In this document: positions 8,161 through 63,859 of the stretch, in pieces | How positions within the stretch are numbered: position 1 is the first letter of the stretch | Layout: the number at the start of each line of letters is the position of its first letter | Virus record (IMG/VR): IMGVR_UViG_3300009158_000031 | Span: 124,001-188,000 of that record | DNA: 64,000 bases | Direction: 5' to 3' (one strand) | Notes under the pieces: generated by a model | Databases searched by the model: none | What the model saw: the letters and a program-made list of their open reading frames with translations, nothing else | What the model was told of the DNA's origin: nothing | Program-made: the position numbers and the translations under genes

Positions 8161-8172
8161 TATTTGAATGAA

Positions 8173-8196: not shown

Positions 8197-8254
8197 CAAT
8201 TCATTTACGAATCAGTAAGATAAATAATAAAATACACAAAAAAAGCAATATACA

Positions 8255-8809: not shown

Positions 8810-8830
8810 TTTCAATCTATTAAGACTTTT

Positions 8831-8861
8831 AAAGAGAACTTCGAAAGAGGTTCTCTTTTGT
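8831..8861 (+). terminator. Rho-independent terminator after tail tube
   Basis: aaagagaacttc-GAAA-gaggttctcttt followed by tgtt. Confidence 0.75.
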
Positions 8862-8918
8862 TGTATATTCATATAAGTAAGAGATAAATATAATAACGAA
8901 AAAAAATTATATTTAAAA

Positions 8919-9182
8919 ATGGGTGAAACGTCGGTTGTTGGTATAATTTTAGCACTAATCGGTATATTTAAAGGAAAAGACATATGGGAATTCTTTAAAC
9001 ATCGAGCTACTATTAAAAGTAAAACTAATGACAAGGTCATTGAGATTTATGAAAAACAACTAAATACTTGCGAAACTAAAGTTCAGCTTTTAGAAACAAA
9101 AAATGATAAATTGTCTAAGAGATTTGAAACTAAATTGAAGAGTCGAGGAAAAACCAAAGAAGAACCTCTTAAAAAAGATTAA
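8919..9182 (+). CDS. Small membrane protein with coiled coil (holin/spanin-like, unassigned)
   Basis: N-terminal hydrophobic helix VVGIILALIGIF, then a heptad-rich C-terminus. Confidence 0.35.
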   Translation: MGETSVVGIILALIGIFKGKDIWEFFKHRATIKSKTNDKVIEIYEKQLNTCETKVQLLETKNDKLSKRFETKLKSRGKTKEEPLKKD

Positions 9183-9185
9183 AAT

Positions 9186-9449
9186 ATGAAAAACTACATA
9201 AACACATTTGAAGAGTTCTTAAATGAATCAATTAACGAAAATGTTTGGGCAGATATAACTAAATCAGCAAAACCTACTAAAGGTCCTTGGACTCTAGTAT
9301 CATCTGATAATAAAAAAGTTTTAGCCCAGAGCACAACTGATAATATACACATGCTTCCTGCTCATTTTGAATCACTGAAACTAAAATTTCCAAAATCAAG
9401 TATTCATATAGAAAGTGCTTCCGGTGAAGTAATTTGGAAAATGAAATAA
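9186..9449 (+). CDS. Putative internal head protein with capsid-targeting sequence (CTS 1)
   Basis: Starts MKNYINTFEEFLNESINE; compare the T4 IPII/IPIII CTS MKTYQEFIAE. Confidence 0.65.
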   Translation: MKNYINTFEEFLNESINENVWADITKSAKPTKGPWTLVSSDNKKVLAQSTTDNIHMLPAHFESLKLKFPKSSIHIESASGEVIWKMK

Positions 9450-9454
9450 TCAAT

Positions 9455-9910
9455 ATGAAAAATTACATAAACACATTTGAAGGTTTCTTAAATGAAGTTC
9501 GATTAAATGAAGATAAAATGCCGGTAGTTTCGGACTTTAAAGCTAACCCAACCGTATTGGATGGTGTTAAAATTAAAAACCTAGCCGAAGAAAATCCTGA
9601 ACAGGTGTTCATTATAAAGAAGGAATATGGCAAATGGCCTGATGATATACTTGCTAAATACAGCAAAACAGAAACTTCGATAACTGAATTTCTACCAATC
9701 GATAAATATGCTACAATGACAAAGTTAGAGTACTTAGGTTCTATGGCTGAAGTTATTGATATGATGTTCGGAGCTGACGAATGGCCACCAGCTAAACAGA
9801 AAGAACTTGCAAATGAACCATACTTATCTACTAATAAACAAGGAGAAGTTATAATAGATGTTCAACGAGGAAATATCAGTAAGTTTGTAAAATTAGCAGA
9901 AAAAAAGTAA
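9455..9910 (+). CDS. Putative internal head protein (CTS 2)
   Basis: True start is ATG 9455: MKNYINTFEGFLNEVRLNE. Confidence 0.65.
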   Translation: MKNYINTFEGFLNEVRLNEDKMPVVSDFKANPTVLDGVKIKNLAEENPEQVFIIKKEYGKWPDDILAKYSKTETSITEFLPIDKYATMTKLEYLGSMAEVIDMMFGADEWPPAKQKELANEPYLSTNKQGEVIIDVQRGNISKFVKLAEKK

Positions 9911-9920
9911 TTTAACTAAT

Positions 9921-10526
9921 ATGAAAAATTACATAAACACATTTGAAGGCTTCTTAAATGAATCTAAATACAAAGGAAATATCTCAGGAGATTCTGCTGA
10001 ATATATTGCTAAAGAAATGTCACAATATGTTAAAGGCATAATTAAACAGCCTAATGATAATGTTACTTACTTCCATTTAAAAGATAAATCCGGCAAATCA
10101 AAAGTTATTAAAACCTTATTAGATGTTTATGGATTAGAAGCAGTAGATGGTGGAAATCAATTTTCTCCATCACCTACTATTAAATTTGATAACGATCAAC
10201 TTCTTGAATCCCTTAGATCAGGTCCTAATGATGCTAAAATATATCCCATTAAAAAAGGAAGTGATCCAGAAGATCTTCTTTCCGGTAGATCTAGAGGATC
10301 ATGGGTAAGTTCAAAAACCATTAATGATATATTAGACGTTTTTGGTAAGGAAATGACCATTTATAAAGGTGACGAAATCACAGAATTCCTTCAAGTTAAT
10401 AGCCGAGATAATAGTGACATATATAAAATAGTTAGACGAGATTTAAGAGGACCTAGAACGGTTGGTTATATCCCTTCATATTATCAGAATTTTGACCAAA
10501 CCGAAGAAATAAACAATACTCGTTAA
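9921..10526 (+). CDS. Putative internal head protein (CTS 3)
   Basis: MKNYINTFEGFLNES; a possible second internal site at QLLES. Confidence 0.65.
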   Translation: MKNYINTFEGFLNESKYKGNISGDSAEYIAKEMSQYVKGIIKQPNDNVTYFHLKDKSGKSKVIKTLLDVYGLEAVDGGNQFSPSPTIKFDNDQLLESLRSGPNDAKIYPIKKGSDPEDLLSGRSRGSWVSSKTINDILDVFGKEMTIYKGDEITEFLQVNSRDNSDIYKIVRRDLRGPRTVGYIPSYYQNFDQTEEINNTR

Positions 10527-10527
10527 T

Positions 10528-11010
10528 ATGAAAAACCACATAAACACATTTGAAGGATTCTTAAATGAAGCTCGATTAAATGAAAGCAAACCTGCTATGA
10601 TGTACTATGTAGTAGCCAAGGATGTCATTAAGGATAGAAGACTTAAAGTATATCCTGAAAACATCGAAAGACTTTTGAACAACTTACAAGCAGACGGACA
10701 TTTATCATATGATGCAACGATAACATCAGATGCAAAGAAAGATATTGAAAACGCATTAGATAAGTTAGACTTGAAAGGGAATGAATTGCTTTCATATGCA
10801 AGAAAAGGCATGAAGTACGAAAGTGAAGATGTTAATGAAGCCAATCAAATTAAAGTTGGAACTTTTGTTAGATACAAAAAAGACGAAGATTTTACTGGTG
10901 GTAAGATCAAATCTATAAGTTCTGGTAAAGCAGAAATACATAATTGGGATGGTTCAACAACAGAACTTCCACTTAAAGATCTTGAATATATTGAGTCTTG
11001 GAATAATTAA
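10528..11010 (+). CDS. Putative internal head protein, two modules (CTS 4)
   Basis: MKNHINTFEGFLNEARLNE; internal EDVNE followed by a small SH3/Tudor-like beta module (IKVGTFVRY..GKIKSI..AEIHNWDG). Confidence 0.65.
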   Translation: MKNHINTFEGFLNEARLNESKPAMMYYVVAKDVIKDRRLKVYPENIERLLNNLQADGHLSYDATITSDAKKDIENALDKLDLKGNELLSYARKGMKYESEDVNEANQIKVGTFVRYKKDEDFTGGKIKSISSGKAEIHNWDGSTTELPLKDLEYIESWNN

Positions 11011-11013
11011 AAT

Positions 11014-11421
11014 ATGAAACCTATCAAACTATATAAAGAGTTTATTAATGAGGCAAAAGACGTTGATTCGGCAATGAAGAAAATCGATGATTTGCCAAAA
11101 GGATCAACCTTTGAAGATGCCAAAAGAATAGATCGTATTTTTGATATCAGTAAACATAGTTGGAGTGAGGTTGTGGAAACTTTTGAAAAGAATCAAAAAT
11201 CCGCAAAGATTAAACCGATAAATATAAAAGACATACAAATAACTCAACCAAATATCCAGAGCAATAAAGTGAAAGCCATGATTGAGAAATTTGATAAATT
11301 ACCTACAATTAATGCAGTTCAATTTCCGGATGGAATATCCATATATGATGGACATCATCGTCTATTAACTGCTTGGTCAATAGGAGAAACACGAATCAAA
11401 GTTAATCTTGTAAAAATATGA
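11014..11421 (+). CDS. CTS-bearing ParB/Sulfiredoxin-fold protein (CTS 5)
   Basis: MKPIKLYKEFINE, then INIKDIQITQPNI and IYDGHHRLLTA (ParB/Srx DGxHR motif). Confidence 0.7.
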   Translation: MKPIKLYKEFINEAKDVDSAMKKIDDLPKGSTFEDAKRIDRIFDISKHSWSEVVETFEKNQKSAKIKPINIKDIQITQPNIQSNKVKAMIEKFDKLPTINAVQFPDGISIYDGHHRLLTAWSIGETRIKVNLVKI

Positions 11422-11648
11422 AACACCTACACACATACAAAGAGTTCTTATTCGAGTCAACGATTTCCGAAATGAAGATAACTTCAGTTGGCGTTAAAGA
11501 GATTCTTAAGAAGCTTTATGACGATGCTAAACTTACAAAAGCATTACATTTTAAAAACTTCCGAGATGCACTCGATTCTATTCTTGGATATAGTCAAACG
11601 GAATTAGAAGAATTAGAAACAGAGATAAAAGAACTAGAGCACGCTTAA
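11418..11648 (+). CDS. Putative internal head protein (CTS 6)
   Basis: MKHLHTYKEFLFESTISE. Confidence 0.6.
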   Translation: MKHLHTYKEFLFESTISEMKITSVGVKEILKKLYDDAKLTKALHFKNFRDALDSILGYSQTELEELETEIKELEHA

Positions 11649-11670
11649 GATAATTTAAAAAATAAAAAAC

Positions 11671-12501
11671 ATGAAACATACACAAACATTCAAAGAGTTC
11701 TTAAATGAACAAGAAGAGATACTTAATGAAGATAGTTCTCTTGCACTTATGGTAATACTGCAAGCGGCTATAGTTAATGGACTTCTAATAGGTCAAATGG
11801 CGGCTAGTGGTGGTGGAGATGGCTTTCATCCTATCGATGATTTAAAAGCTTGGTGGGCGAAACGTAAAAAAGATAAAGCTGTAAAAAGTATTGTTGATAA
11901 ATTAAAAGAAGATCCTGAAGTTTTAGCCTTTTTGAAAATGTCAAATTGGGCACAAAAAGGAAAATGGTATAAACTTATTGAACCTAAACTTAATGACGAA
12001 GAGAAAAAATATCTAAAAAGTATTTCAAGAACTCCATTTATGAATGAGGAAGTTAATGAAAATTCCGCAATCCTTCTTGATCTTTCTGATAAGCAGTTGG
12101 CACTTTCTATAAAGGCTAAATTACCAGCCAAGTATAAAAAAGATACGAAGACTTTAATATACAATGCTCCATATTCAATGGTTTCTCATGGTGCTAAACT
12201 TACAAACCTTCCAACTCCTTCACGAGTATATCAATTGGAAAAAATGAATGAAACTTATAGAGGATCTGATAATTGGATATCTTTATCTTCATTAGCTATT
12301 GTACAAGATACAACCAATCAAGTTACTTTTGTAATTGTATATGAAGAATTTGATCCAATTCAATTTGATGAAATAAAATCAAATAAAGATTTGTACAAAG
12401 AAGAGGATTATAAAGACGAAAAAGATTTGCTTAAAAAGATGCAAACTTGGTTTGCTTATTCTGAAAAGGTCTTTAAAGAAGTAATAGAAGATCACTCATA
12501 A
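11671..12501 (+). CDS. Putative internal head protein, two modules (CTS 7)
   Basis: MKHTQTFKEFLNEQEEILNE; hydrophobic segment LALMVILQAAIVNGLLIG; internal FMNEEVNE linker. Confidence 0.6.
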   Translation: MKHTQTFKEFLNEQEEILNEDSSLALMVILQAAIVNGLLIGQMAASGGGDGFHPIDDLKAWWAKRKKDKAVKSIVDKLKEDPEVLAFLKMSNWAQKGKWYKLIEPKLNDEEKKYLKSISRTPFMNEEVNENSAILLDLSDKQLALSIKAKLPAKYKKDTKTLIYNAPYSMVSHGAKLTNLPTPSRVYQLEKMNETYRGSDNWISLSSLAIVQDTTNQVTFVIVYEEFDPIQFDEIKSNKDLYKEEDYKDEKDLLKKMQTWFAYSEKVFKEVIEDHS

Positions 12502-12512
12502 AAAAACATAAT

Positions 12513-12989
12513 ATGAAACATATACTCACATTCAAAAACTTCTTAAACGAGGAAAGAGTTTATGGAATGTTCAATGATTCTCAAGGAAAACCATCTAAAC
12601 TTTCACAAGAGATTTTAGATATTTGTCTAAAAGCACTACCTAAATATGTAATAGATAATATTGAATCAGTTGAAGCTTCCGGTTATTCTAAGACAAATTT
12701 AGCATCACCTCCTACGGTTAGTAATAAAGGTCAATCAAGAGGTGAAAATGATTATACGACTATTGTTCTAATATTCAAAAATCCAATGGGAAAATCTAAA
12801 ACAACTGAATTGACGGTTGGATTAAGAAAAAGAACTTCTGGACCAGGAACTGGTTATCTTGCGGTTAAACCTACTGCAAATGGTCATTATGTTTTACCTG
12901 AACATAGTGCCGCAATTGAATTTTATGATGCAGCGCCTGAAAGTTTAGCGGATTTATATAAGAGTACACTAGAAAAATTAATGAAATAA
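12513..12989 (+). CDS. Putative internal head protein (CTS 8)
   Basis: MKHILTFKNFLNEE. Confidence 0.65.
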   Translation: MKHILTFKNFLNEERVYGMFNDSQGKPSKLSQEILDICLKALPKYVIDNIESVEASGYSKTNLASPPTVSNKGQSRGENDYTTIVLIFKNPMGKSKTTELTVGLRKRTSGPGTGYLAVKPTANGHYVLPEHSAAIEFYDAAPESLADLYKSTLEKLMK

Positions 12990-12990
12990 T

Positions 12991-13353
12991 ATGAAACATA
13001 TACCAACATTCGATAATTTCCTAAATGAAGGAACCATCATGATTTTTCACTACTCAAAGAAATCTTCAGAGATTGATGGTGACGTGAAAGAATTACAGAA
13101 GAAAGCTCAAGAATTTATTAAAATCGCAAGAGACAAAGATTACAATATATCTTCTAACGATTCCGTACTTTATTTTCCAAATTTTAAATGGGCAGGAGGT
13201 AAACAAATCTTTGGACCATCATTAGGTATTAAAGCAGGATCAGAAACAATGCTAATTAATCCAATAGGCTCTGATAAAATAATCAAGATTAGCGAAGGCT
13301 TGCTTGTTCGTTTTGTAAAAGACGGCAGAATCGAATCATATAATTTATACTAA
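12991..13353 (+). CDS. Putative internal head protein (CTS 9)
   Basis: MKHIPTFDNFLNEG. Confidence 0.65.
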   Translation: MKHIPTFDNFLNEGTIMIFHYSKKSSEIDGDVKELQKKAQEFIKIARDKDYNISSNDSVLYFPNFKWAGGKQIFGPSLGIKAGSETMLINPIGSDKIIKISEGLLVRFVKDGRIESYNLY

Positions 13354-13354
13354 T

Positions 13355-13603
13355 ATGAAACATATACTCACATTCAAAAACTTCTTAAATGAAGGATTCA
13401 AGAAACCTTATAGCGAAAAAATGAGCCTTGAGGATTTTTCTGCTATAGAAGTTGGAAGTGAGGTTCTTTATGCTGGAGCAACTTACGAAGTGGTTAACAA
13501 CGATGGTGCAACTCTTCAATTAAAACCGGCTAAAGGTGCTAATGGTAAAGCGACTAAAGTTAATTTCTCAATGTTTAATGTTGCTGGAGCAATCCGCGAT
13601 TAG
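13355..13603 (+). CDS. Putative internal head protein (CTS 10)
   Basis: MKHILTFKNFLNEG; SH3-like cargo (IEVGSEVLYAGATYEVV). Confidence 0.65.
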   Translation: MKHILTFKNFLNEGFKKPYSEKMSLEDFSAIEVGSEVLYAGATYEVVNNDGATLQLKPAKGANGKATKVNFSMFNVAGAIRD

Positions 13604-13688: not shown

Positions 13689-15050
13689 TTGAAATTAAGA
13701 CAAGGGTTATTATTCCTAAAATCTCTACACACAAGATCTAAATCCGATGAAGAAGTTCTTCAATGGATAGAATCTAGACGATCATTAGTTAAGCACACGA
13801 TTCAACAAATCGATCTTAATAAGCTAAATGGTTGGAATTTCTACGATCATAAGATAGAACATACTTCTGGTAAATTTTATCAGATTCATATTAGACGCAA
13901 TGAGTTAGATGGAAGGATTTGGGATCAACCAATAATCAATCAACCCGAAATTGGTATTCTTGGATTTATTACCAAACAAATCGATGACGTACTTCATTTT
14001 CTAGTTCAAGCTAAAATTGAACCAGGAAATATCAATATCGTTCAGTTATCACCAACCGTACAATCAACTAAAAGTAATTTCACTAAAGTTCATGGTGGTG
14101 CATTAACACCCTTTGTAGAATATTTCTTAAAAGGAGAATCTAGAATTTTAGTAGATCAACTACAATCCGAACAATCTAGTAGGTTCTTTCAAAAACGTAA
14201 TCGCAATATTATTATAGAAGTTGAAGATGAGTTATCTCATGAAAATTATTTATGGATGACTCTTGGAGATCTTGTTGCATTAACTAGATATCCTAATACT
14301 GTCAATATGGATAGTCGAACCGTTTTAAGTTGTATTCACTTTGGTTCATATTCATTTGAACATCTAGAACTAAGAGATTTTCTTGGTGGAATTTCACATG
14401 ATTCTGCTTGGATAGATTCACTACTTCGTAAAGATGTATATCAAAAATCCCATCCAGAAATTCTTTCATTAATTACCGATCTTAAATTTAGAAGAGAAGC
14501 TTTGACTAGGTTAATTTATCTTTCAGAATCACATGATTGGAATTTGATTGATGGTAAGATTGTTCATAAAGATGAAAAATATTTTGATGTAGTAGGTTAT
14601 CGAATATTTATTGAAAATCGAGAATCCGCTCAATGGGATCAACCTTTAATCCGACCTAAATCTACTGGAATATGTTGTTTCTTTGCTCGTAAATTTGAAG
14701 GAGTATTTCACTTACTAGTTCAGCTAAAAGATGAGATTGGATCTTTTGATGGTGTTGAAATGGCACCAACTATTCAAATGTCTGAAGAGAATTTAGATCT
14801 ATCGCCTTTCTTTGAATCGTATCAAAGACTAATAAATACAGATTCGGTTTTATTTGATGTTATGCAATCCGAAGAAGGAGGAAGATTTTATCAAGAACAA
14901 AACCGAAATATTATCATAGAAGTTAATGAAGAACTGGAACTTCCAAGAAATTATATTTGGATGACTCTTAATCAACTTAAAACATTCTTACAATATAACA
15001 ATTACGTAAATATTCAAACACGTTCAATTATGTCATCTTTACCTCTATGA
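13689..15050 (+). CDS. NDP-hexose 2,3-dehydratase (EvaA/SpnO/TylX3 family), TTG start
   Basis: Two-repeat architecture: WDQPIINQPEIGILGF..LVQAKIEPGN..QLSPTVQST..QSEQSSRFFQKRNRN, then WDQPLI..LLVQ..EMAPTIQ..QSEEGGRFYQEQNRN. Confidence 0.92.
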   Translation: MKLRQGLLFLKSLHTRSKSDEEVLQWIESRRSLVKHTIQQIDLNKLNGWNFYDHKIEHTSGKFYQIHIRRNELDGRIWDQPIINQPEIGILGFITKQIDDVLHFLVQAKIEPGNINIVQLSPTVQSTKSNFTKVHGGALTPFVEYFLKGESRILVDQLQSEQSSRFFQKRNRNIIIEVEDELSHENYLWMTLGDLVALTRYPNTVNMDSRTVLSCIHFGSYSFEHLELRDFLGGISHDSAWIDSLLRKDVYQKSHPEILSLITDLKFRREALTRLIYLSESHDWNLIDGKIVHKDEKYFDVVGYRIFIENRESAQWDQPLIRPKSTGICCFFARKFEGVFHLLVQLKDEIGSFDGVEMAPTIQMSEENLDLSPFFESYQRLINTDSVLFDVMQSEEGGRFYQEQNRNIIIEVNEELELPRNYIWMTLNQLKTFLQYNNYVNIQTRSIMSSLPL

Positions 15051-16000
15051 AAGTAGCTATTCTAAATTGTTCAGATATTGCAAAACGAAGAATGATTCCG
15101 GCATTTCAGGCAATACCTGAAGTTGAAGTTTCTATCGTATGTAGCCGAGATATTCGTAGAGCTAAACAATATGCTGAAGAATTTGGAATCCCAAAATATA
15201 CGGATAATCCAGATGAAATTATTGGAGTTGATCTAGTTTATATTTCATCTCCTCCATCTGAACATTTTGATGCGATTAAAACATTTATAAAGAGAAAAAT
15301 TAATATTCTTTGCGAAAAATCTCTTACCATAGATGCATATCAAACAACCTATCTAATTAATCTAGCCGATAAACAAGGAGTTCTTATACAAGAAAATTAT
15401 GGATTTCCTTTTCATACTCAGTGGAAATGGATAAAAGAAAACCTAAATAAAATAGGAGATCTTCTTTACATAAGAAGTGGATTTGAATTTCCTCCAAGAA
15501 ATACCGAAACAGATTTTCGTTACAAATCTGCTCTCGGTGGTGGTGCTCTTTTCGATGCCGGTGGATATCCTATTAAATTAGCCTCTTTATTATTGGGAAC
15601 TCCTCAAAAACTTGATGCAGTTACTCATATATCAAAATCACTTGATATTGATCTTTCTGGAAGAACATTTATTATTGATGAAACTGGAAAATCTGCATTT
15701 TTAACTTGGAGTTTTGAATCTACTTATCGTTGTGATGTAGAAATTGTAGGAACTCAAGGAACAATTAAAGCTGGTAAGATATTTACTCCTAGAATTGATG
15801 AACATGTTGAAGTGTCAATTTCACTTATTGGAGAGCCGGTAGAAAGACAACAATTTGTTTGCGATCATTTCGTTGAACTTATTCGAGATTTTATAAATAG
15901 AATAAAGATTAAAGATAACTCTCATCATAAAAGTATATTAAAACAATCAAAATGGCAAACATATGTATCGTCTACTAGTATCAGAACCTTCACTAACTAA
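15047..16000 (+). CDS. Gfo/Idh/MocA oxidoreductase, likely NDP-sugar 3-ketoreductase (SpnN/KijD10-like)
   Basis: CSDIAKRRMIPA, ILCEKSL, GGGALFDAGGYP; coupled to the 2,3-dehydratase by an ATGA overlap. Confidence 0.82.
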   Translation: MKVAILNCSDIAKRRMIPAFQAIPEVEVSIVCSRDIRRAKQYAEEFGIPKYTDNPDEIIGVDLVYISSPPSEHFDAIKTFIKRKINILCEKSLTIDAYQTTYLINLADKQGVLIQENYGFPFHTQWKWIKENLNKIGDLLYIRSGFEFPPRNTETDFRYKSALGGGALFDAGGYPIKLASLLLGTPQKLDAVTHISKSLDIDLSGRTFIIDETGKSAFLTWSFESTYRCDVEIVGTQGTIKAGKIFTPRIDEHVEVSISLIGEPVERQQFVCDHFVELIRDFINRIKIKDNSHHKSILKQSKWQTYVSSTSIRTFTN

Positions 16001-17046: not shown

Positions 17047-17661
17047 ATGCATGTAGTTATTGGAGCTAATGGATTAGCTAAACAAGTACTTCCTTTATAC
17101 GACGCAAATCCTAGAGTTATCTTCTTTGATGATACTGAAAATGCAGGAGAGAACCTATATGAACATAAAATTGCACATGATCTTAAATGGGTAAAAGAGT
17201 ATACGTCAATTGGCGAGACAGTAAATTTCTCAATTTGTATAGGAAATCCTAAATGGCGTGAGTATTTTTATTATCTTCTGGTTGATATGGGAGCCACACC
17301 AATTAATATCTTATCGGAATTATCCTCCATTCAAGAGAGATCCGAGATTGACACAGGGAATATCTTTTTAGACTACACTTTAGTAGAAACCGATGTAAAA
17401 ATTGGAAAAGGAAACCTTATAAATTGCTATGCCGGTTTATTTCATGATTCTCAAATAGGAGATTTTAATGAGATTATGCCAGGAGCTAAAATTCTAGGAG
17501 GAGCTAAAATAGGTAACTCTTGTAGAATAGGAACGAATGCAACAATTCTTCCACAAATACATATTTGCTCGAATGTAGTAATTGGAGCTGGAGCAGTGGT
17601 TACTAAAAATATTACTGAACCAGGAACATATATTGGAATTCCTGCAAGGAAGCAAGGATAA
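17047..17661 (+). CDS. NeuD/PglD/VioB-like sugar N-acetyltransferase (left-handed beta-helix)
   Basis: VVIGANGLAK Rossmann-like N-terminus; hexapeptide repeats; ends GAGAVVTKNI..GTYIGIPAR. Confidence 0.88.
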   Translation: MHVVIGANGLAKQVLPLYDANPRVIFFDDTENAGENLYEHKIAHDLKWVKEYTSIGETVNFSICIGNPKWREYFYYLLVDMGATPINILSELSSIQERSEIDTGNIFLDYTLVETDVKIGKGNLINCYAGLFHDSQIGDFNEIMPGAKILGGAKIGNSCRIGTNATILPQIHICSNVVIGAGAVVTKNITEPGTYIGIPARKQG

Positions 17662-17684
17662 ATAACAAAATACAACATATATTA

Positions 17685-18566
17685 ATGGAATTTTTAAAGT
17701 ACAACAACTTCATTCTTAATGAGCAATCTAAATGGGTTAATTTAGACACTATTAATGAAGCTGCACTTACGGCTACTCCAGATAAAAGCGTTAAGTTTGG
17801 TATTTGTATTACCACTTACAAAATTGATGCTGGTGGTAGACAAAATCACATGTCCACCGAAAAAGTTCTGAGAGAATGTTTAGAGTCAGTTAAAACACAG
17901 AGTTGGCCAGAATGGAAAGTCTATATTATGGGAGACGCATATCCACAAGAAGAATGGCCGGAAATTGAAAAACTTGCTGCATCTATCGTTCCAAAAGATA
18001 AACTTTGGATGGATAATCTAAAAACACCAGGAGAAAGAGACAAATATGATGGATCTATTCCACATCTAACAGGAGGAAATACGGCAGCAAACGTGACCAT
18101 CGCTCAAATGAAAAAAGATGGCATTAAGTATTTTGCACGTCTTGACCATGATGATGCTTGGAAAACCGATCATTTAAAAACTCATGCTACTGCTTATACA
18201 CAATTCCCAGAAGTTGTTTATAGTTTAACACAAGCTCGCAAGAAAAGAGTAAAAGGAGATGCCGGATCTTACATGTATTTTCCTGACAAAGGAACATATG
18301 AGAATTCTGAAAATAATTACACATTAGGTCTTGGTGGACAATGTCATTCAGCAATGACTTGGAAATTAGAACCTTTAAAATATATCAAGTATCGTACTTG
18401 GGATCAACAAAAAGCGACACAACCTCGTAGAAAAGAGTGCTTCCCTGGCGATTGGGATAATACTGAAAGAATTAAAAGAATTGTAGAAGATGAAAATAAT
18501 AAACACTCAATGATTTTTGTTCCTAAATTAACTGTAAAATATCGTAACTCTGAAGGAAAATTTTAA
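17685..18566 (+). CDS. GT2-like glycosyltransferase with N-terminal CTS
   Basis: MEFLKYNNFILNE..TINE leader; GICITTY, CLESVKTQS, IMGD, YFARLDHDDAW (DxDD). Confidence 0.75.
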   Translation: MEFLKYNNFILNEQSKWVNLDTINEAALTATPDKSVKFGICITTYKIDAGGRQNHMSTEKVLRECLESVKTQSWPEWKVYIMGDAYPQEEWPEIEKLAASIVPKDKLWMDNLKTPGERDKYDGSIPHLTGGNTAANVTIAQMKKDGIKYFARLDHDDAWKTDHLKTHATAYTQFPEVVYSLTQARKKRVKGDAGSYMYFPDKGTYENSENNYTLGLGGQCHSAMTWKLEPLKYIKYRTWDQQKATQPRRKECFPGDWDNTERIKRIVEDENNKHSMIFVPKLTVKYRNSEGKF

Positions 18567-18567
18567 T

Positions 18568-19140
18568 ATGAAAAAACTACTAATCTTATTAATCTCGAGT
18601 CTTCCTCTTTTTGGATATTCACAAGACACTCTGGTAAAAAGACCTATCTATACTGTAAAATATTCTCAATCACTACAACAACCTCTTTGGTTAGAGTATT
18701 CTGTTAAAAGTCGTGAATGTGGAGCGAAACGAGATGGAATGGATTTTTATTCCGAAAAGGGAATTATAACAAGTGACAACGCTGATTATGCCGATAATGT
18801 TTATGATAAAGGTCATATGGCTCCTGCTGCCGATTTCTGTGTTAATCGAGAAACTCTATTACTAACATTTTCCTATCTCAATTGTGCTCTTCAACACTAT
18901 AAATTAAACCGAGGTGTATGGAAACAACTTGAATCAAATGAACGTGAATGGTCTAAAACTGATTCATTGATTATTCGAATCGATGTTATTTTTGAAAATG
19001 CTACCAAACTTCCTAGTGGTGCAACTATTCCTACTGCTTTTAAGAAGACTATTAAATTCTATAATTCAAAGAAGACGGTTGTTTATTACTTCAAAAACGA
19101 ACCTCCTACAAAAACACTAGATCAATATCTAGTTAAATAA
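18568..19140 (+). CDS. Secreted DNA/RNA non-specific endonuclease (NucA/Endonuclease_NS)
   Basis: Signal peptide MKKLLILLISSLPLFGYSQ; YDKGHMAPAAD; TFSYLNCALQ..LNRGVWKQLE. Confidence 0.92.
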   Translation: MKKLLILLISSLPLFGYSQDTLVKRPIYTVKYSQSLQQPLWLEYSVKSRECGAKRDGMDFYSEKGIITSDNADYADNVYDKGHMAPAADFCVNRETLLLTFSYLNCALQHYKLNRGVWKQLESNEREWSKTDSLIIRIDVIFENATKLPSGATIPTAFKKTIKFYNSKKTVVYYFKNEPPTKTLDQYLVK

Positions 19141-19144
19141 CTAA

Positions 19145-19201
19145 TTGTTAATAACTTTTGATCCCGAGATTTTTTAATCTCGGGATTTTGTATTATATTT
19201 G
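19145..19201 (+). promoter_or_regulatory. Composite early promoter, copy 1
   Basis: TTGTTAATAACTT at 19145; Bacteroidota -7 element TATATTTG at 19194 (49 bp later); internal palindrome at 19161-19186. Confidence 0.8.
19161..19190 (+). terminator. Perfect inverted repeat embedded in promoter 1 (terminator for upstream operon and/or operator)
   Basis: atcccgagatt-tttt-aatctcgggat followed by tttg. Confidence 0.55.
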
Positions 19202-19223
19202 TATATACAATTTAAAACAATAT

Positions 19224-19616
19224 ATGCAAAAGATTAGTGCTCAAGTTGTCCTCATCAACGAGGAAGGAAAAATTCTCTGTGTTTCTAGAAAAGATAACCA
19301 TTCTGATTTTGGTTTACCTGGTGGTAAATCCGATCCTGAAGATAATGGTGATCCCGTTCAAACTGCCATTAGAGAAACCAAAGAAGAAACCGGTTTAGAT
19401 GTTCACGATCTTAAACTTATATTTGCAATTCATAAATACGGTTTCATGAATTATACTTATGTTGCCAAGTATTCTGGTGAAATTCATTTTAATGAACCTC
19501 ATATTGTTAAATGGGCACCAATCAAATTAGCAACGGAAGGAACCTTCGGTGTGTATAATCAATTAGTTGCAGAATCCTTAAGAGATTCAAATTATGAATT
19601 CATCCGCCATTTTTAA
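19224..19616 (+). CDS. NUDIX hydrolase
   Basis: Nudix box GLPGGKSDPEDNGDPVQTAIRETKEETGL; start moved to ATG 19224, downstream of the promoter. Confidence 0.92.
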   Translation: MQKISAQVVLINEEGKILCVSRKDNHSDFGLPGGKSDPEDNGDPVQTAIRETKEETGLDVHDLKLIFAIHKYGFMNYTYVAKYSGEIHFNEPHIVKWAPIKLATEGTFGVYNQLVAESLRDSNYEFIRHF

Positions 19617-22937: not shown

Positions 22938-24296
22938 ATGAAAGTAGCTGAACAGAAATCAAAATCGGTAACTGAATATCTGGATACCGAATATTTAAGT
23001 TATGCCAAGTATGTGGTGGAAAATCGTGCAATACCTTCGGTTATTGATGGATTCAAACCAACACAAAGAAAAATCATTTTTACTGCAAATCGAGCATGGA
23101 AGAATGGAACTGAAAAACCTTTTAAGATTTTTCAATTGAGCGGTAAAGTTGCAGTTGAATCTTTTTATCATCATGGTAATGCATCACTTGATGCTGCAAT
23201 TATTGGTATGGCACAATCATTTAAGAATTCACTTCCGCTCCTTGAAGAGATTGGTCAATTTGGATCTTTGCGATCTCCTGAAGCCGGTGCTCCTCGTTAT
23301 ATCTCAACTAAATTATCTAAAAATTTCAGATTGATTTATAAAGACTTCGAATTACTTACTCCTCGAATGGAAGAAGGAAATGAAATTGAACCTGAATATT
23401 TCTTACCAATTATACCTACTGTTTTATTAAATGGATCTTCCGGTATTGCAGTTGGATTTGCCACTAACATTCTTAACCGAAATCCAATTGATTTAATCGA
23501 TGCTTGTCTTGCGATTGTTAATGGAAAGAAATTTAAAGAACCTTTACCATGGTGGAGAGACTTTAACGGTAACGTTGAAAAAGTCGATGGCAGTGCATCA
23601 TCATTTGTATTTCGTGGAATCTATGATGTAAAAGATACTACAACCGTAGAAATCACAGAACTTCCACCTTCAATGACTCTTGAGAAATATGATAATATTC
23701 TTAATGGTTTATTGGAAAAAGGAATCATTCGTCATTATGATGATAATTGTTCAAATGGAATTAGCTATACCGTAAAAATTGGTAGAGCAGAAATGAAACA
23801 ACATGAACCTCGTCTTGAAGGTTATTTAAAATTAGCCGAAGCCGAAACAGAAAATCTAACTTGTTTAGATGAACGTGGTAAGCTAATCATTTTCAAAAAC
23901 GTAAATGAAATTATCAATTACTTTGTAAACTTCCGTCTAAGTTATTATGACAAACGAAAACAATATTACGTTGATCTATATACCCGAGACCTAACTAGAT
24001 TATCAAATCGAGCTAGATTTATTAAAATGGTTGTTGATAGCAAACTAAAAATTAATAACGTTCCTAAAGCACAAATCGAAGCTGAATTAATAAAGAATAA
24101 ATTCGATCAGCTAGATGGATCGTTTACTTACTTACTTTCAATGCCTATTCATTCATTAACGAAAGAAAAAATCGATGAATTGCTTAAAGATGTTGAAACC
24201 AAAAAATCTGAAATCGAAGAAATTCAAAAGTTAACTAAGGAAGAATGGTATAAACAAGACCTTATGGCTCTTAAAAAATCATTACAAACCAAATAA
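22938..24296 (+). CDS. gp52: DNA topoisomerase II medium subunit (T4 gp52/GyrA-like)
   Basis: RAIPSVIDGFKPTQRKI, FYHHGNAS, GQFGSLRSPEAGAPRYI (active Tyr), LLNGSSGIAVGFATNI. Confidence 0.96.
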   Translation: MKVAEQKSKSVTEYLDTEYLSYAKYVVENRAIPSVIDGFKPTQRKIIFTANRAWKNGTEKPFKIFQLSGKVAVESFYHHGNASLDAAIIGMAQSFKNSLPLLEEIGQFGSLRSPEAGAPRYISTKLSKNFRLIYKDFELLTPRMEEGNEIEPEYFLPIIPTVLLNGSSGIAVGFATNILNRNPIDLIDACLAIVNGKKFKEPLPWWRDFNGNVEKVDGSASSFVFRGIYDVKDTTTVEITELPPSMTLEKYDNILNGLLEKGIIRHYDDNCSNGISYTVKIGRAEMKQHEPRLEGYLKLAEAETENLTCLDERGKLIIFKNVNEIINYFVNFRLSYYDKRKQYYVDLYTRDLTRLSNRARFIKMVVDSKLKINNVPKAQIEAELIKNKFDQLDGSFTYLLSMPIHSLTKEKIDELLKDVETKKSEIEEIQKLTKEEWYKQDLMALKKSLQTK

Positions 24297-61433: not shown

Positions 61434-62957
61434 ATGAAACCTATTAAAAACTACAACGAATTCATTAATGAAGCATGGATTGGTCCATTCGTATTCAATG
61501 AAGACATGACCGATGATGAACTAAAGGCTATATACCAAGGTGCATTAGATGGATTTGCTTATTGGCAAAAAGGATTTGAATATCCAAAAGCCGATTACAA
61601 AAAGGCATATACTGAAATTGGAAAGATTCTAAAGAAAAGAGGAGTTAATGTTGATGAATCTGTTAATGAAGGATCTAACGACGAAATGGTAAAACGGAGT
61701 TGTGTCGAAAGACTTTCTCAATTCTTTAGAGTTAGTCCAAACGCATTATCACATTTCAAATTTGATGGAACCGATAACATTAAAGCTTTAACAAAAGCTC
61801 TTAATTCTACATCAGATGAAGGAACCGAGGCATACTATAAAGTAGCAATCCGAGTTGGAAAACAAGATGCCGGTATCGAAGAATCTATCGAGGAATCAGC
61901 TAAATGTCCTCCTATATACATTCCGGTATTATCTAATATCGATCATACTAGAATAATCAAATGGATGGATATTCATTTTGATAGTCATAAATGGGATATG
62001 AAGAAATCCGGTGCTGGTTTTGAAATCGATGTTGAAAAACTATCTAGTCAAGAACAAGATGATTTATTAAAATATTTACACTCACAAGATTATTTAGAAG
62101 AATCTGTTAATGAAGCTTGGAGTAATATAGACACCGACAAAGCTGCCGATCTAATCAATAAAGAAATTGGAGTTAATCCTGGTTATTTCTTTATTGGCGA
62201 TGAAGATTTATGCATCAAATTTGATAAATTATGGACTGAAAAGAAATACAAAGTAGCTCTTAATATGTTATTTTTTATTGAAAATCTAAAAGATCTTAAA
62301 GACTTCATAAAACAAAACCAAAACGAATCGGTTAATGAAGCAGTATCACCAGAAGTACATCGTATGGTTAATAAATTTGTAACCGGTATGGCTGATAAAT
62401 ATGATTATTCTTTACAAGATGCAGTTTATGCAATACTAGACGTTTTAAAAAGTCAAAAATATAAAGGATTAAAAGAATCTGTTAATGAAGGTGAAACTTT
62501 AATATTTGATGAGATCGGAGAAAACCTAACCAAACTTCAGGATCAAATAGATGCAATGCTTAAATGGGAAATCACCGATCAAAAATGGATCGTTGCACTT
62601 AAAACAATTCAATCTGCCTGTTCTAAATTGGAAGATACTGTCGCTAAAGCTGATCAGAAATTAGGTGCTATTGAATATAATGAATCCATTAGTGAAGGTC
62701 TTTTAAAATTAGATGAAGGTGCTGTTAAACAATTTGAGATCGATTATAAAGACATGGAAAGTAGTATCAAACGAGGTATTGGTTGGATTGATCCTGAATA
62801 TGTGGCTGAAACTTGGGAGAATTCTTCAGATACTATTGATTATGAAATAGTTAGAAATGAAATTCTTACTCGTCTAATTAAAGCCGATCTTCTTTATACA
62901 TCACTAGATGGAGAAACTAAAGGTAAAAGAATTACCAACATAAGTCAAATTAAATAA
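61434..62957 (+). CDS. CTS-bearing multi-module polyprotein with ES(V/I)(N/E/S)E linkers
   Basis: True start ATG 61434: MKPIKNYNEFINE; linkers DESVNE, EESIEE, EESVNE, NESVNE, KESVNE, NESISE. Confidence 0.75.
   Translation: MKPIKNYNEFINEAWIGPFVFNEDMTDDELKAIYQGALDGFAYWQKGFEYPKADYKKAYTEIGKILKKRGVNVDESVNEGSNDEMVKRSCVERLSQFFRVSPNALSHFKFDGTDNIKALTKALNSTSDEGTEAYYKVAIRVGKQDAGIEESIEESAKCPPIYIPVLSNIDHTRIIKWMDIHFDSHKWDMKKSGAGFEIDVEKLSSQEQDDLLKYLHSQDYLEESVNEAWSNIDTDKAADLINKEIGVNPGYFFIGDEDLCIKFDKLWTEKKYKVALNMLFFIENLKDLKDFIKQNQNESVNEAVSPEVHRMVNKFVTGMADKYDYSLQDAVYAILDVLKSQKYKGLKESVNEGETLIFDEIGENLTKLQDQIDAMLKWEITDQKWIVALKTIQSACSKLEDTVAKADQKLGAIEYNESISEGLLKLDEGAVKQFEIDYKDMESSIKRGIGWIDPEYVAETWENSSDTIDYEIVRNEILTRLIKADLLYTSLDGETKGKRITNISQIK
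61656..62490 (+). repeat. 16-bp linker repeats gaatc(t/g)gttaatgaag at 61656, 62100, 62325 and 62475
   Basis: Three identical copies and one with a single substitution; degenerate copies at 61881 and 62682. Confidence 0.92.
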
Positions 62958-63859
62958 TGCTAAAATTTAATCAATTTGTTAACCTGATTCTTAATGAAGG
63001 AGGTAATGCGATTGAGGATGCTCGTCCTATTTTGCAATCTGAAATAGATGCAACGTATGCATATGTTATTAAAAACATATATCCTCTTATTGGTCTTGCC
63101 GAAGATTTTGCTAAACCAATAGGATCTTTTAAGAAAAAAGCACCTGATCAAACATCTGGTGATATCGATATTGCCGTTCTTGCTGATAGAATTGCCGGAG
63201 AAAATGGAATTGATTTATCTCAGGTTCTTGAATTCATCGCATCTAAATTGAGTGATTATTCTCCGGTCGTTAGTAAAGGGTTTCAACAAGTTTCTATAGG
63301 TGTTCCAATTGAAGGTGATAAGAAAAAAGGTATTGCACAAATTGATTTGATGCTAACAGATAATCTGAATTTTTCCTCCTTCATGTATCATTCACCAGAC
63401 TTTACTCAAGCAGAATCCAAATATAAAGGACTTTACCGTAATATTCTACTAATGAATATCATTAGCAATTCGAAACGAGAAACTACCAAGCTAACCGACA
63501 AAGGTGAAATTGAAGAATATCGTTCATATGTACTTCGTCTAAATCAAGGTGTTGTTGCGGTAACCAAATCGTTTATAGGTAAGAAAGGGTTAGTTAAGAA
63601 TCCTACATTACTCAACGATCAAGATAAATTTATGTCTAATACTCCAGAAGTTATTGCGGAATTGGCATTCGGTCCGGATGTTCCCATTTCAGAAATAATG
63701 ACTTTTGAAGATACTTGGAGACATACAATGGATTCTAAATTTATTCACCAAGATAAATTAGATGCAATTCTAAAAGATTTCAGAACTAGATTACTTGCTG
63801 CTAAAGTTCCTTTCCCTATTGAATGTGTAGAACAATACCCAAATATATTTACATCATGA
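62957..63859 (+). CDS. CTS-bearing DNA polymerase beta-superfamily nucleotidyltransferase
   Basis: MLKFNQFVNLILNEGGNA; PIGSFKKK..SGDIDIAV (GS..DxD); AQIDLM. Confidence 0.8.
   Translation: MLKFNQFVNLILNEGGNAIEDARPILQSEIDATYAYVIKNIYPLIGLAEDFAKPIGSFKKKAPDQTSGDIDIAVLADRIAGENGIDLSQVLEFIASKLSDYSPVVSKGFQQVSIGVPIEGDKKKGIAQIDLMLTDNLNFSSFMYHSPDFTQAESKYKGLYRNILLMNIISNSKRETTKLTDKGEIEEYRSYVLRLNQGVVAVTKSFIGKKGLVKNPTLLNDQDKFMSNTPEVIAELAFGPDVPISEIMTFEDTWRHTMDSKFIHQDKLDAILKDFRTRLLAAKVPFPIECVEQYPNIFTS

What the first reader, a model, noticed from the sequence alone, without database searches (positions are those of the whole stretch)
17685..18566. Glycosyltransferase with a capsid-targeting leader directly after the rare-sugar operon
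Seen: MEFLKYNNFILNE..DTINE precedes a GT2-like domain (RLDHDDAW). It has its own GATAAATA element (17657) overlapping the end of the acetyltransferase gene. Inference: a glycosyltransferase that is packaged into the head, and then either modifies DNA or internal proteins in the capsid or is injected to glycosylate a host target. This would parallel the packaged ADP-ribosyltransferase Alt of T4. Adjacency suggests it uses the trideoxy sugar.
Basis: partly seen in the sequence, partly recalled or inferred. Interest (0 to 1): 0.72.

Follow-up and report, generated by a model that had tools for sequence, protein, structure and literature searches.

The report
Phage glycosyltransferase with capsid-targeting-like leader
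A 254-kb freshwater jumbo phage encodes a sugar-transferring enzyme with an added N-terminal tag like the one phage T4 uses to load proteins into its head and then cut off, so the enzyme is probably packed into the virus particle, which is not yet shown.

Summary
ORF 17685-18566 (+, 293 aa) is a GT-A/GT2-fold glycosyltransferase. Its catalytic fold starts at about residue 37. Residues 1-36 are an add-on: most relatives (225-250 aa) begin directly at the first strand.

The add-on carries two Glu-ended sites, LNE13 and INE25. N24 and E25 are invariant in 21 homologues.

The genome encodes a T4-type (S77) prohead protease. At least 36 ORFs start M-K-x-I-x-T-F-x-E-F-[LIV]-N-E. The T4 capsid targeting sequence (CTS) MKTYQEFIAE scores 10.7 bits on this family's profile.

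This GT alone matches that profile poorly (2.5 bits) because of a one-residue insertion. However, a profile built from GT homologues of other genomes retrieves this genome's leader proteins as its top hits.

Only one of at least 10 GTs in the genome has the leader. GATAAATA at 17657 is a positioned element that is conserved upstream of the GT in relatives. The GT always follows an acetyltransferase gene, usually within an amino-sugar cassette.

Packaging, cleavage, donor and acceptor are inferred, not shown. I rate it a new variant of a known kind (CTS-guided head cargo), with interest about 0.64.

The parts
17657..17664 (+). GATAAATA promoter-like element, 28 nt upstream of the GT start, overlapping the acetyltransferase stop codon
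   Evidence: Read. 14 of 23 + strand copies in the genome lie 8-60 nt upstream of a gene start, against a 6.6% baseline. Conserved upstream of the GT in L003, L006, L008, L025, L027 and L029. Promoter function is inferred.
17685..18566 (+). Whole ORF, 293 aa: leader, linker and GT-A glycosyltransferase
17685..17723 (+). Leader part 1 (M1-E13): aromatic-x-x-aromatic-I-L-N-E. It is the genome's leader motif with one extra residue. Putative first cleavage site is LNE13.
   Evidence: F3, F9 and E13 are at least 90% conserved in 21 homologues. Modelled at pLDDT about 51-54, outside the fold. A profile of GT-homologue N-termini retrieves the genome's leader ORFs.
17724..17759 (+). Spacer and second site (Q14-E25), ending I-N-E followed by Ala. 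Putative final cleavage site.
   Evidence: N24 and E25 are invariant in 21 homologues of 53-95% identity. An [ILV]-x-E site is kept at this place in most clades below 40% identity. A second xNE site recurs in 6 of 31 canonical leaders vs a 4.6% background.
17760..17792 (+). Linker (A26-V36) between the leader and the first strand
   Evidence: Alignment A4: leaderless homologues start at or just before the K/I-F-G-I strand. No secondary structure in the model.
17793..18563 (+). GT-A (GT2-related) catalytic domain, K37-F293, with the DxD-type motif D154-H-D156-D157 at 18144-18155
   Evidence: Pfam PF00535. Profile hits to GalT1 5hea and SpsA. Foldseek hit to SpsA at E 2e-12. D154, D156 and D157 are at least 90% conserved, and Q72, D84, N111, H163 and P200 invariant, over 101 sequences.
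13689..15050 (+). NDP-hexose 2,3-dehydratase, first gene of the sugar cassette
   Evidence: PF03559, E 5e-134. Same cassette in L003, L004 and L006.
15047..16000 (+). GFO/IDH/MocA oxidoreductase (probable sugar ketoreductase)
   Evidence: PF01408 and PF22725
15963..17045 (+). DegT/DnrJ/EryC1 sugar aminotransferase
   Evidence: PF01041, E 3e-90
17047..17661 (+). PglD-like hexapeptide N-acetyltransferase, always directly upstream of the GT
   Evidence: PF00132 and PF17836. Adjacent to the GT in the own locus and in L003, L004, L006, L008 and L009; one small leader ORF lies between them in L005. Also close to leaderless homologues in L068 and L069.
9186..13603 (+). Array of ten consecutive small ORFs with the canonical or near-canonical leader (MK[NH]xI(N)TFxxF[LI]NE), immediately upstream of the sugar cassette
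61434..63859 (+). Two further leader-bearing ORFs (507 aa and 300 aa). Their leaders (MKPIKNYNEFINE; MLKFNQFVNLILNE) are close to the GT's.
   Evidence: No Pfam or PHROG match.

Best explanation
The gene encodes a soluble GT-A-fold glycosyltransferase of about 31 kDa, made as a precursor with a 25-residue N-terminal propeptide.

The propeptide is a diverged member of this phage's large family of T4-CTS-like leaders. By analogy with T4, it would bind the enzyme to the scaffolding core while the prohead assembles. The phage's S77 prohead protease would then cut after Glu13 (LNE) and/or Glu25 (INE, followed by Ala). The trimmed enzyme, starting at about A26, would stay in the head with the DNA and leave with it at infection.

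The enzyme is the last gene of a four-enzyme cassette: 2,3-dehydratase, ketoreductase, aminotransferase and N-acetyltransferase. From knowledge of these families, the cassette should turn dTDP-4-keto-6-deoxyglucose into a dTDP-acetamido-trideoxyhexose. That sugar is the likely donor.

The acceptor is not known. My order of likelihood is:
1. Co-packaged material: the glycosylated hydroxy- or hydroxymethyl-cytosine DNA that this phage probably makes, or the many leader-bearing internal proteins.
2. A host target after ejection.

Shown by tools: the fold, the add-on nature and conservation of the extension, the leader family, the protease gene and the synteny. Inferred: core binding, cleavage, retention in the virion, donor and acceptor.
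For: Extension is an add-on.
- An exhaustive search shows most relatives (225-250 aa) align from query residues 36-38 to their own residues 2-7.
- In the AF2 model residues 1-20 have pLDDT about 52, and the fold starts at residue 38.

The sites are under selection.
- N24 and E25 are invariant, and F3, F9 and E13 at least 90% conserved, in 21 homologues of 53-95% identity.
- Most of seven further clades at 32-42% identity keep an [ILV]-x-E about 10-14 residues before the first strand.

A leader family exists.
- At least 36 ORFs match a 14-position profile at E<0.01, and about 45 match a looser pattern.
- Conserved positions show synonymous codon variation, so selection acts on the protein.
- The residue after Glu is A, S or G in 19 of 31 leaders.
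- Leader genes cluster next to portal, protease-scaffold and MCP.

Link to T4.
- The genome has a PF03420/S77 protease (50.7 bits; PHROG head maturation protease at E 6e-42) fused to a scaffold-like region, and a Gp23-family MCP.
- The T4 CTS MKTYQEFIAE (PMC8442874) scores 10.7 bits on the leader profile. Only about 0.4% of background N-termini reach 9.5 bits.
- T4 Alt is trimmed at ITE-6 and LTE-619, and T4 internal head proteins join the core through the CTS (PMC5694885).

The GT leader belongs to the family.
- A profile of the first 16 residues of GT homologues from other genomes gives canonical leader ORFs as ranks 2-7, and as 12 of the next 20 hits against about 0.35 expected.
- 4 of 8 clade representatives reach 5.8 bits or more on the canonical profile, against a background rate of 1.6%.

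Specificity.
- None of the other 9 or more GTs, and none of the sugar enzymes, has a leader.
- Contigs with leaderless GT homologues (61 kb sampled) have no leader ORFs, while several contigs with leader-bearing GTs do.

Synteny with an acetyltransferase or amino-sugar cassette holds in all contexts read.

The leader sits on other enzymes too: a RimK ATP-grasp protein and a PAP2 phosphatase.
Against: - There is no proteomic or biochemical datum for this or any related phage.
- This GT's own N-terminus scores only 2.5 bits on the canonical leader profile, in the top 5% of background. It carries an extra residue between Phe and LNE.
- In the 462-kb relative LR756500 the GT homologue's extension no longer matches either profile, although that genome has the leader family. 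The tag can therefore decay.
- The donor-making enzymes have no leader. A packaged enzyme would then lack its phage-made donor inside the head and at injection, unless small molecules enter proheads or it uses a host donor.
- The complex prediction of leader with protease gave no answer.
- That the leader family is a capsid-targeting signal rests on likeness to T4, not on a test.
Confidence: 0.55

Rival explanations
1. The enzyme is an ordinary cytoplasmic terminal transferase of the sugar pathway. It decorates phage DNA or virion or host glycans before packaging. The N-terminal extension is a relic or an uncleaved accessory helix, for example for partner binding or oligomerisation. It may have been acquired by recombination with a leader gene but no longer directs packaging.
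For: - Weak match of this GT's N-terminus to the canonical profile.
- The LR756500 homologue's extension is degenerate.
- Leaderless homologues do the same job at the end of similar cassettes in other phages.
- The donor pathway enzymes are not tagged.
- RNA-library contigs bridge the acetyltransferase-GT junction, which fits simple operon membership (weak).
Against: - N24 and E25 are invariant and E13, F9 and F3 at least 90% conserved, while neighbouring residues drift.
- The [ILV]-x-E site persists down to about 33% identity.
- The profile of GT N-termini specifically retrieves leader ORFs.
- A relic would not keep exactly the protease-type sites.
Confidence: 0.27
2. The leader is recognised and cut by the prohead protease, but as a timing or activation switch (zymogen) or a disposal signal. 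The enzyme is not retained in mature heads.
For: - In T4 most core proteins that enter the prohead are cut into fragments and leave (PMC5694885).
- Two sites in the propeptide resemble multi-site propeptides made to be cleared.
Against: - Both sites lie in the first 25 residues. I made no scan for further sites inside the well-folded core, so there is no sign of fragmentation, but it is not excluded.
- In T4, proteins cut only once next to the CTS are the ones that stay (PMC8442874).
Confidence: 0.1
3. The whole leader family is a sorting or interaction tag for something other than the head interior, for example another assembly, a compartment, or a chaperone. The GT shares that other destination.
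For: - No direct test of the family's destination exists.
- About 14% of the genes carry it, far more than T4's handful.
- The motif also occurs at the C-terminus of an 861-aa K/A/E-rich protein.
Against: - Likeness to the experimentally defined T4 CTS.
- Glu-ended motif with a small next residue, matching T4-type protease sites.
- Leader genes cluster beside portal, protease-scaffold and MCP.
- Co-occurrence with an S77 protease-scaffold fusion in two distant genomes.
Confidence: 0.08

Closest known systems
[quoted passage not shown]
   Same: - Short N-terminal tag on otherwise unrelated proteins, with the pattern aromatic-x-E-F-[IL]-x-E and a Glu at the cut.
- The genome has a gp21-type (S77) protease and a Gp23-type capsid protein.
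- The T4 CTS scores 10.7 bits on this genome's leader profile.
   Different: - Here the family has at least 36 members instead of a handful, and the consensus ends in N-E.
- The GT's copy has one extra residue and a second, better conserved site 12 residues on.
- No experimental proof of targeting or cutting.
T4 Alt, the packaged and injected ADP-ribosyltransferase
   Same: - A modifying enzyme, rather than a small basic protein, carrying a short N-terminal propeptide ended by [IL]-x-E. Alt is cut at ITE-6 (PMC5694885).
- It is the precedent for enzyme cargo that acts in the next host.
   Different: - Different fold and chemistry: GT-A glycosyltransferase, not an ADP-ribosyltransferase.
- Alt uses NAD, which every host has. 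This GT sits behind a phage pathway for a rare sugar that would be absent at injection.
- It may work like Alt, but it is not a member of Alt's family.
GT2/GT-A glycosyltransferases such as B. subtilis SpsA, S. aureus TarS/TarP, L. monocytogenes RmlT and AvpGT
   Same: Same fold, a DxD-type motif and a nucleotide-sugar binding N-terminal half. Foldseek E-values are 2e-12 to 1e-9 for the chains named (TMq 0.50-0.60), and SpsA was solved with dTDP.
   Different: - Only 10-16% identity, and there is no PHROG family.
- None of these has a cleavable targeting leader.
- Donor and acceptor cannot be read from these matches.
Phage DNA glycosyltransferases of hypermodifying phages (RB69, DLP3 and RL38JI transferases, which resemble GT-B-type enzymes in PMC13326640; T4 alpha/beta-GT are GT-B by textbook knowledge)
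   Same: - The genome has the hallmark trio of ThyA homologue, GT-B-like transferase and nucleotide kinase.
- The ThyA homologue is 53% identical to those of E. coli and Klebsiella T4-like phages. I read these as Mosigvirus (RB69-type) from my own knowledge of the phage names.
- In relative L005 that trio lies directly upstream of the sugar genes and this GT.
   Different: - The known DNA transferases in that paper are all likened to GT-B-type enzymes (PMC13326640). This one is GT-A.
- In the own genome it lies 136 kb from the ThyA module.
- No test of DNA as acceptor.
Ejection or inner-body proteins of giant phages (phiKZ, SPN3US) processed by S80 proteases
   Same: Many head-internal proteins with N-terminal propeptides cut after Glu, often at several sites (PMC5694885).
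   Different: Those use S/A/G-x-E motifs and long propeptides without a shared short tag. Here the protease is S77-type and the tag is short and shared.

Membership tests
GT2 / GT-A glycosyltransferase | Sequence match to the family model above the curated threshold | tested here: met
   PF00535, 29.7 bits vs a 23.3 cut-off, though only residues 59-99 align. A family profile hits GalT1 (5hea) at 5e-9 and SpsA at 2e-8.
GT2 / GT-A glycosyltransferase | GT-A fold (single Rossmann-like alpha/beta domain) | tested here: met
   AF2 model with pLDDT 90.4 and pTM 0.88. Foldseek SpsA at E 2e-12 (1h7q), TMt up to 0.72 (1qg8); TarS, RmlT, WrtF and AvpGT also match.
GT2 / GT-A glycosyltransferase | Acidic DxD-type metal and nucleotide-sugar motif | tested here: met
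   L-D154-H-D156-D157. D154, D156 and D157 are at least 90% conserved in 101 sequences.
GT2 / GT-A glycosyltransferase | Glycosyl transfer from a nucleotide sugar | not testable with these tools
   Needs an enzyme assay.
T4-type CTS-tagged head-internal protein | Short N-terminal tag shared with other proteins of the same phage | tested here: inconclusive
   The own sequence scores 2.5 bits, rank 122 of 1769, on the canonical profile. At the family level the test is met: the reciprocal profile retrieves leader ORFs, and homologues score 6-12 bits.
T4-type CTS-tagged head-internal protein | Tag ends in an [IL]-x-E protease site | tested here: met
   L11-N-E13 and I23-N-E25-A26. E13 is at least 90% conserved and N24 and E25 invariant. 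T4 examples are IAE, ITE-6 and LTE-619.
T4-type CTS-tagged head-internal protein | Tag is separable from the folded domain | tested here: met
   Leaderless homologues start at the first strand. Low pLDDT for residues 1-20.
T4-type CTS-tagged head-internal protein | Phage encodes a gp21-type (S77) prohead protease | tested here: met
   PF03420, 50.7 bits, at G000 101739-102092. phrog_207 at E 6e-42.
T4-type CTS-tagged head-internal protein | Protein present in the mature head with its tag removed | not testable with these tools
   Uncultured phage with no virion proteome. The complex prediction gave no answer.
T4 Alt-like injected enzyme | ADP-ribosyltransferase fold | tested here: not met
   The fold is GT-A. 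The likeness is in the mode of delivery only.
Phage DNA base glycosyltransferase | GT-B fold as in known DNA transferases | tested here: not met
   The fold is GT-A. The DNA transferases in PMC13326640 all resemble GT-B-type enzymes.
Phage DNA base glycosyltransferase | Gene linked to a ThyA-homologue, kinase and transferase module | tested here: inconclusive
   Linked in L005. In the own genome the module is at G000 5474-9280, 136 kb away.

The most novel reading that the evidence does not exclude
This would be the first glycosyltransferase delivered into a phage head by a CTS-type leader. It would be one item of an arsenal of about 40 leader-tagged cargo proteins, including an ATP-grasp ligase and a PAP2 phosphatase. 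It would work inside the capsid or in the newly infected cell, either finishing a rare-sugar decoration on packaged DNA or internal proteins, or glycosylating a host target as Alt ADP-ribosylates RNA polymerase.
Probability: 0.4. Interest if true: 0.8.

Novelty: new variant of a known kind. Interest (0 to 1): 0.64.

Why it matters
CTS-guided loading of proteins into heads is known from T4, where it applies to a few small internal proteins and to Alt.

If the reading is right, a widespread group of freshwater jumbo and huge phages uses the same device on a much larger scale. At least 36 tagged genes occur here, and 30 or more in the 462-kb phage LR756500. The tagged proteins include enzymes, among them a glycosyltransferase tied to a rare-sugar pathway.

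That would add protein or DNA glycosylation to the activities a virion can carry. It would give a simple sequence rule (N-terminal aromatic-x-x-F-[LIV]-N-E) for predicting virion cargo in uncultured phages. It would also offer a natural targeting tag for packaging foreign enzymes.

It also points to a phage with at least 10 glycosyltransferases and a probable glycosylated-cytosine genome.

Tried and rejected
- PHROGs gave no family for the GT or for six leader proteins.
- A PDB sequence search with the close-homologue profile found nothing. A wider profile was needed.
- The first AF2 run with 21 close homologues was poor (pLDDT 63.8). It was replaced by a 101-sequence run.
- The search for related loci with the wide alignment found no stretch conserved enough to search with.
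- The canonical-leader HMM did not place this GT significantly. I therefore tested the homologues and a reciprocal profile.
- I first judged GATAAATA to be chance from its raw count. I reversed this after the positional analysis.
- Complex prediction of protease residues 1-230 with GT residues 1-45 gave no answer. It counts neither for nor against.
- Contexts of two leaderless homologues were on contigs too short to use. Longer contigs were found later.
- Lay of RNA-library contigs shows presence in metatranscriptomes and contigs bridging the junction. It gives no read-level 5' ends and DNA carry-over is possible, so it is weak.
- An RNA-level cause for leader conservation was rejected, because conserved residues use different codons.
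- A signal-peptide reading of the leader was rejected on reading the sequence, without a tool. The leader is short, charged and Glu-ended, unlike the lipoprotein-type N-terminus of the neighbouring nuclease.
Full report
**What the window is.** The window is bases 124001-188000 of a single 254,393-bp, 33% GC IMG/VR viral contig, estimated 83% complete. Nearly all genes lie on the + strand. The genome has a Gp23-family major capsid protein, a portal, and a T4-type (Pfam S77) prohead protease fused to a coiled-coil, scaffold-like region. It also has a T4-like split topoisomerase II. Its nearest relatives in the phage collection are uncultured huge phages of 462-735 kb. The runs that hold the sequence are freshwater and lake metagenomes.

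**The observation.** ORF 17685-18566 (+, 293 aa) is as described. It opens MEFLKYNNFILNE, has DTINE at residues 21-25, and has RLDHDDAW at 152-159. Pfam GT2 matches above threshold, but only over residues 59-99. A 101-sequence alignment gave a confident AF2 model, with pLDDT 90.4 and pTM 0.88. The GT-A fold starts at residue 38, and residues 1-20 have pLDDT of about 52. The best solved matches are SpsA (solved with dTDP), AvpGT, TarS/TarP, RmlT and WrtF. Foldseek E-values are 2e-12 to 1e-9 at 10-16% identity. The family profile also hits GalT1 and SpsA by sequence. D154, D156 and D157 are at least 90% conserved across 101 sequences. The enzyme therefore looks catalytically intact.

**The extension is an add-on.**
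- The exhaustive representative search found 296 relatives. The bulk are 225-250 aa and align from query residues 36-38 to their own residues 2-7.
- Their sequences start directly at the first strand.
- Only the close family (21 sequences, 53-95% identity) and seven further clades of about 300 aa carry an extension.
- Within the close family N24 and E25 are invariant. F3, F9 and E13 are at least 90% conserved, while the residues between them drift.
- In most of the distant clades an [ILV]-x-E is kept about 10-14 residues before the first strand. Examples are VLNE, ILLE, QIFE, LLTE and SINE, and the next residue is usually A or K.

**The leader family.**
- A profile built from 31 clear cases (M-K-x-I-x-T-F-x-E-F-[LIV]-N-E) finds at least 36 distinct ORFs at E<0.01. 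A looser pattern finds about 45, roughly 14% of the genes.
- Ten leader ORFs stand in a row at window 9186-13603, just upstream of the sugar cassette. Six more lie just upstream of the portal gene.
- Conserved residues use different codons (Phe TTT/TTC, Asn AAT/AAC, Leu by four codons). The constraint is therefore on the protein.
- The residue after Glu is A, S or G in 19 of 31 leaders.
- A second xNE site within 15 residues occurs in 6 of 31, against a 4.6% background. The GT has the same layout.
- The tag sits on unrelated proteins. Most have no known family, but they include a RimK-type ATP-grasp enzyme, a PAP2 phosphatase, a KTSC protein and a DUF5824 protein.
- The same family, with consensus MKYIKEYEEFLNE and 30 or more ORFs, is present in the 462-kb phage LR756500. 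That phage also has an S77 protease fused to a scaffold-like region.

**Link to T4.**
- The T4 capsid targeting sequence is MKTYQEFIAE. It is cut once, and the cargo stays in the head (PMC8442874).
- T4 internal head proteins join the scaffolding core through it, and foreign proteins fused to it are encapsidated (PMC3012670 and PMC5694885).
- T4 Alt is trimmed at ITE-6 and LTE-619.
- The ten-residue T4 CTS scores 10.7 bits on this genome's leader profile (aligned kt[FY]eeF[LI]). Only about 0.4% of this genome's other N-termini reach 9.5 bits.
- That [IL]-x-E is the gp21 site is established knowledge. Here I cite only the examples above.

**Does the GT's N-terminus belong to the family?** Taken alone, it matches weakly: 2.5 bits, rank 122 of 1769, which is the top 5% of background. 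The cause is one extra residue (F-I-L-N-E instead of F-L-N-E) and the lack of Lys2. Other members also have insertions here, such as FVVNE, FITHLNE and FVNLILNE. Three further tests support membership.
1. Homologues without the insertion score 6-12 bits. Four of eight clade representatives reach 5.8 bits, against a 1.6% background rate. The nominal binomial P is 4e-6, but the clades are not fully independent.
2. A profile built only from the first 16 residues of GT homologues from other genomes was searched against all 1769 candidate N-termini of this genome. It returned this GT first. Canonical leader ORFs then took ranks 2-7 and 12 of the next 20 places, where about 0.35 would be expected.
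3. In the sister clade the tag reads MFKKFNEFLGE. It is nearly the same as two leaders of this genome, MFKKFRQFINE and MFKKFFQFISE.

**Specificity.**
- The genome encodes at least 10 glycosyltransferases: six GT2-like ORFs, one GT-B-like, one DXD sugar-binding type, one GT11 and one GT10-like. Only this one has the tag.
- None of the four cassette enzymes has the tag.
- Leaderless homologues P0042 and P0056 lie on phage-like contigs, again at the end of DegT plus hexapeptide-acetyltransferase cassettes. P0036 lies among sugar genes, with a DegT gene next to it.
- Together those three contigs (61 kb sampled) contain no leader ORF. Several contigs with leader-bearing GTs do.
- The tag thus appears in the lineage that has the leader system.
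- It can also decay. The LR756500 homologue's extension matches neither profile.

**Gene context and donor.**
- Upstream lie a 2,3-dehydratase, a GFO/MocA oxidoreductase, a DegT aminotransferase and a PglD-like acetyltransferase.
- The same five-gene unit occurs in relatives whose flanks differ (L003/L004).
- In L005 the sugar genes differ, but an aminotransferase, an acetyltransferase and the GT remain, with one small leader ORF between the last two.
- In L008 only the acetyltransferase precedes the GT, and the leader is retained.
- From what these enzyme families do, the product should be a dTDP-linked acetamido-trideoxyhexose made from dTDP-4-keto-6-deoxyglucose. This is inference.
- No nucleotidyltransferase was found in the held 254 kb.
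- Two SDR epimerase/dehydratase genes are present.

**The GATAAATA element.** It is not over-represented by count. However, 14 of 23 + strand copies lie 8-60 nt upstream of a start, mostly at 23-36 nt. It is kept upstream of the GT in six relatives. A second positioned motif, ATATATAA (20 of 30 copies), precedes the protease-scaffold gene, the 1083-aa homologue of a sheath-annotated gene, and many leader genes. Promoter function and timing are inferred. Contigs assembled from lake and sediment RNA libraries cover the cassette and the GT, and some bridge the acetyltransferase-GT junction. This is weak evidence of transcription, because it comes from contigs only and DNA carry-over is possible.

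**What it might glycosylate.**
- At G000 5474-9280 lie a divergent ThyA homologue, a GT-B-like protein, a thymidylate-kinase-like protein and an SDR.
- The ThyA homologue is 53% identical to those of E. coli and Klebsiella T4-like phages of about 169 kb. I take these to be Mosigvirus (RB69-type) phages from my own knowledge of their names. RB69's homologue makes 5-hydroxy-dCMP, the anchor for sugars on DNA (PMC13326640).
- In L005 this module lies directly upstream of the sugar genes and the GT. DNA, perhaps as acceptor of a distal sugar, is therefore a real candidate.
- Against this, the DNA transferases in that paper all resemble GT-B-type enzymes. Also, a second locus with four GTs in a row suggests an oligosaccharide, possibly on proteins.
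- A host target after injection is possible but awkward, because the phage-made donor would be absent at that moment.
- I cannot decide among these.

**Verdict.** Packaging, cutting and target are inferred. I put 0.55 on the packaged-and-trimmed reading and 0.27 on a cytoplasmic enzyme with a non-functional or other-purpose extension. The rest goes to a protease-timed switch or a non-capsid destination for the tag. I found no paper describing a glycosyltransferase with a capsid targeting sequence. The one paper that holds both terms does not describe a CTS-tagged glycosyltransferase in the passages I read; it concerns DNA glycosylation in RB69 and DLP3.

Noticed in passing
window 9186-13603, and genome-wide (G000 5084 to 224666): At least 36 ORFs (about 45 by a looser pattern) begin with M-K-x-I-x-T-F-x-E-F-[LIV]-N-E. 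Ten stand in a row here and six just upstream of the portal gene. Tagged proteins include a RimK ATP-grasp enzyme (G000 109121), a PAP2 phosphatase (223447), a KTSC protein (222842) and a DUF5824 protein (12539).
   Followed up: yes
LR756500.1 (loci L043-L066), e.g. 317720, 332545, 181730: The published 462-kb uncultured huge phage has the same leader family (MKYIKEYEEFLNE, 30 or more ORFs) and an S77 protease fused to a scaffold-like region. The tag system therefore spans distant jumbo and huge phages.
   Followed up: partly
window 47692-52713 and 57260-58441: A second glycan locus holds four glycosyltransferases in a row (DXD sugar-binding type, GT2, GT11, GT10-like), then an SDR epimerase/dehydratase and a DegT aminotransferase. 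Another GT2 lies 4.5 kb on. None has the leader.
   Followed up: partly
G000 5474-9280 (locus L012): A ThyA homologue lies next to a GT-B-like protein, a thymidylate-kinase-like protein and an SDR. The ThyA homologue is 53% identical to those of T4-like E. coli and Klebsiella phages that I take to be Mosigvirus. This is the gene set of phages with glycosylated 5-hydroxy- or hydroxymethyl-cytosine DNA.
   Followed up: partly
genome-wide; in the window e.g. 17657, 8219, 8883 (GATAAATA) and 4883, 24761, 53261 (ATATATAA): There are two positioned upstream motifs. GATAAATA has 14 of 23 copies upstream of starts. ATATATAA has 20 of 30, and it precedes the protease-scaffold gene, the 1083-aa homologue of a sheath-annotated gene, and many leader genes. 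They may be two promoter classes.
   Followed up: partly
G000 106061-108646 and 103692-105302 (locus L017): An 861-aa Lys/Ala/Glu-rich protein next to the capsid gene ends in ...EEYQFLINE, a leader-like motif at a C-terminus. The major capsid protein starts MYLINES.
   Followed up: no
window 18568-19140 and 19158-19616: Directly downstream of the GT lie a non-specific DNA/RNA endonuclease with a lipoprotein-like signal peptide (MKKLLILLISSLPLFGYSQ) and a NUDIX hydrolase. The same pair follows the GT region in L006.
   Followed up: no
L006 3915-5371; L008 5162-6606: In some relatives a TauD-family dioxygenase follows the GT directly, and a further gene comes next (GDSL/SGNH-like by Pfam in L006 only). 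Both are absent from this window. This may be a variant tailoring of the sugar or of the acceptor.
   Followed up: no
L003 16352-19136: In a related phage the topoisomerase IV-type subunit gene carries an intein-splicing domain and is split by an inserted gene. The window's copy (22938-24296) is uninterrupted.
   Followed up: no
L005 9568-9999: In the sister clade a 143-aa leader-bearing ORF (MDNLKDFNDFINEGSLNEA) sits between the acetyltransferase and the GT.
   Followed up: no
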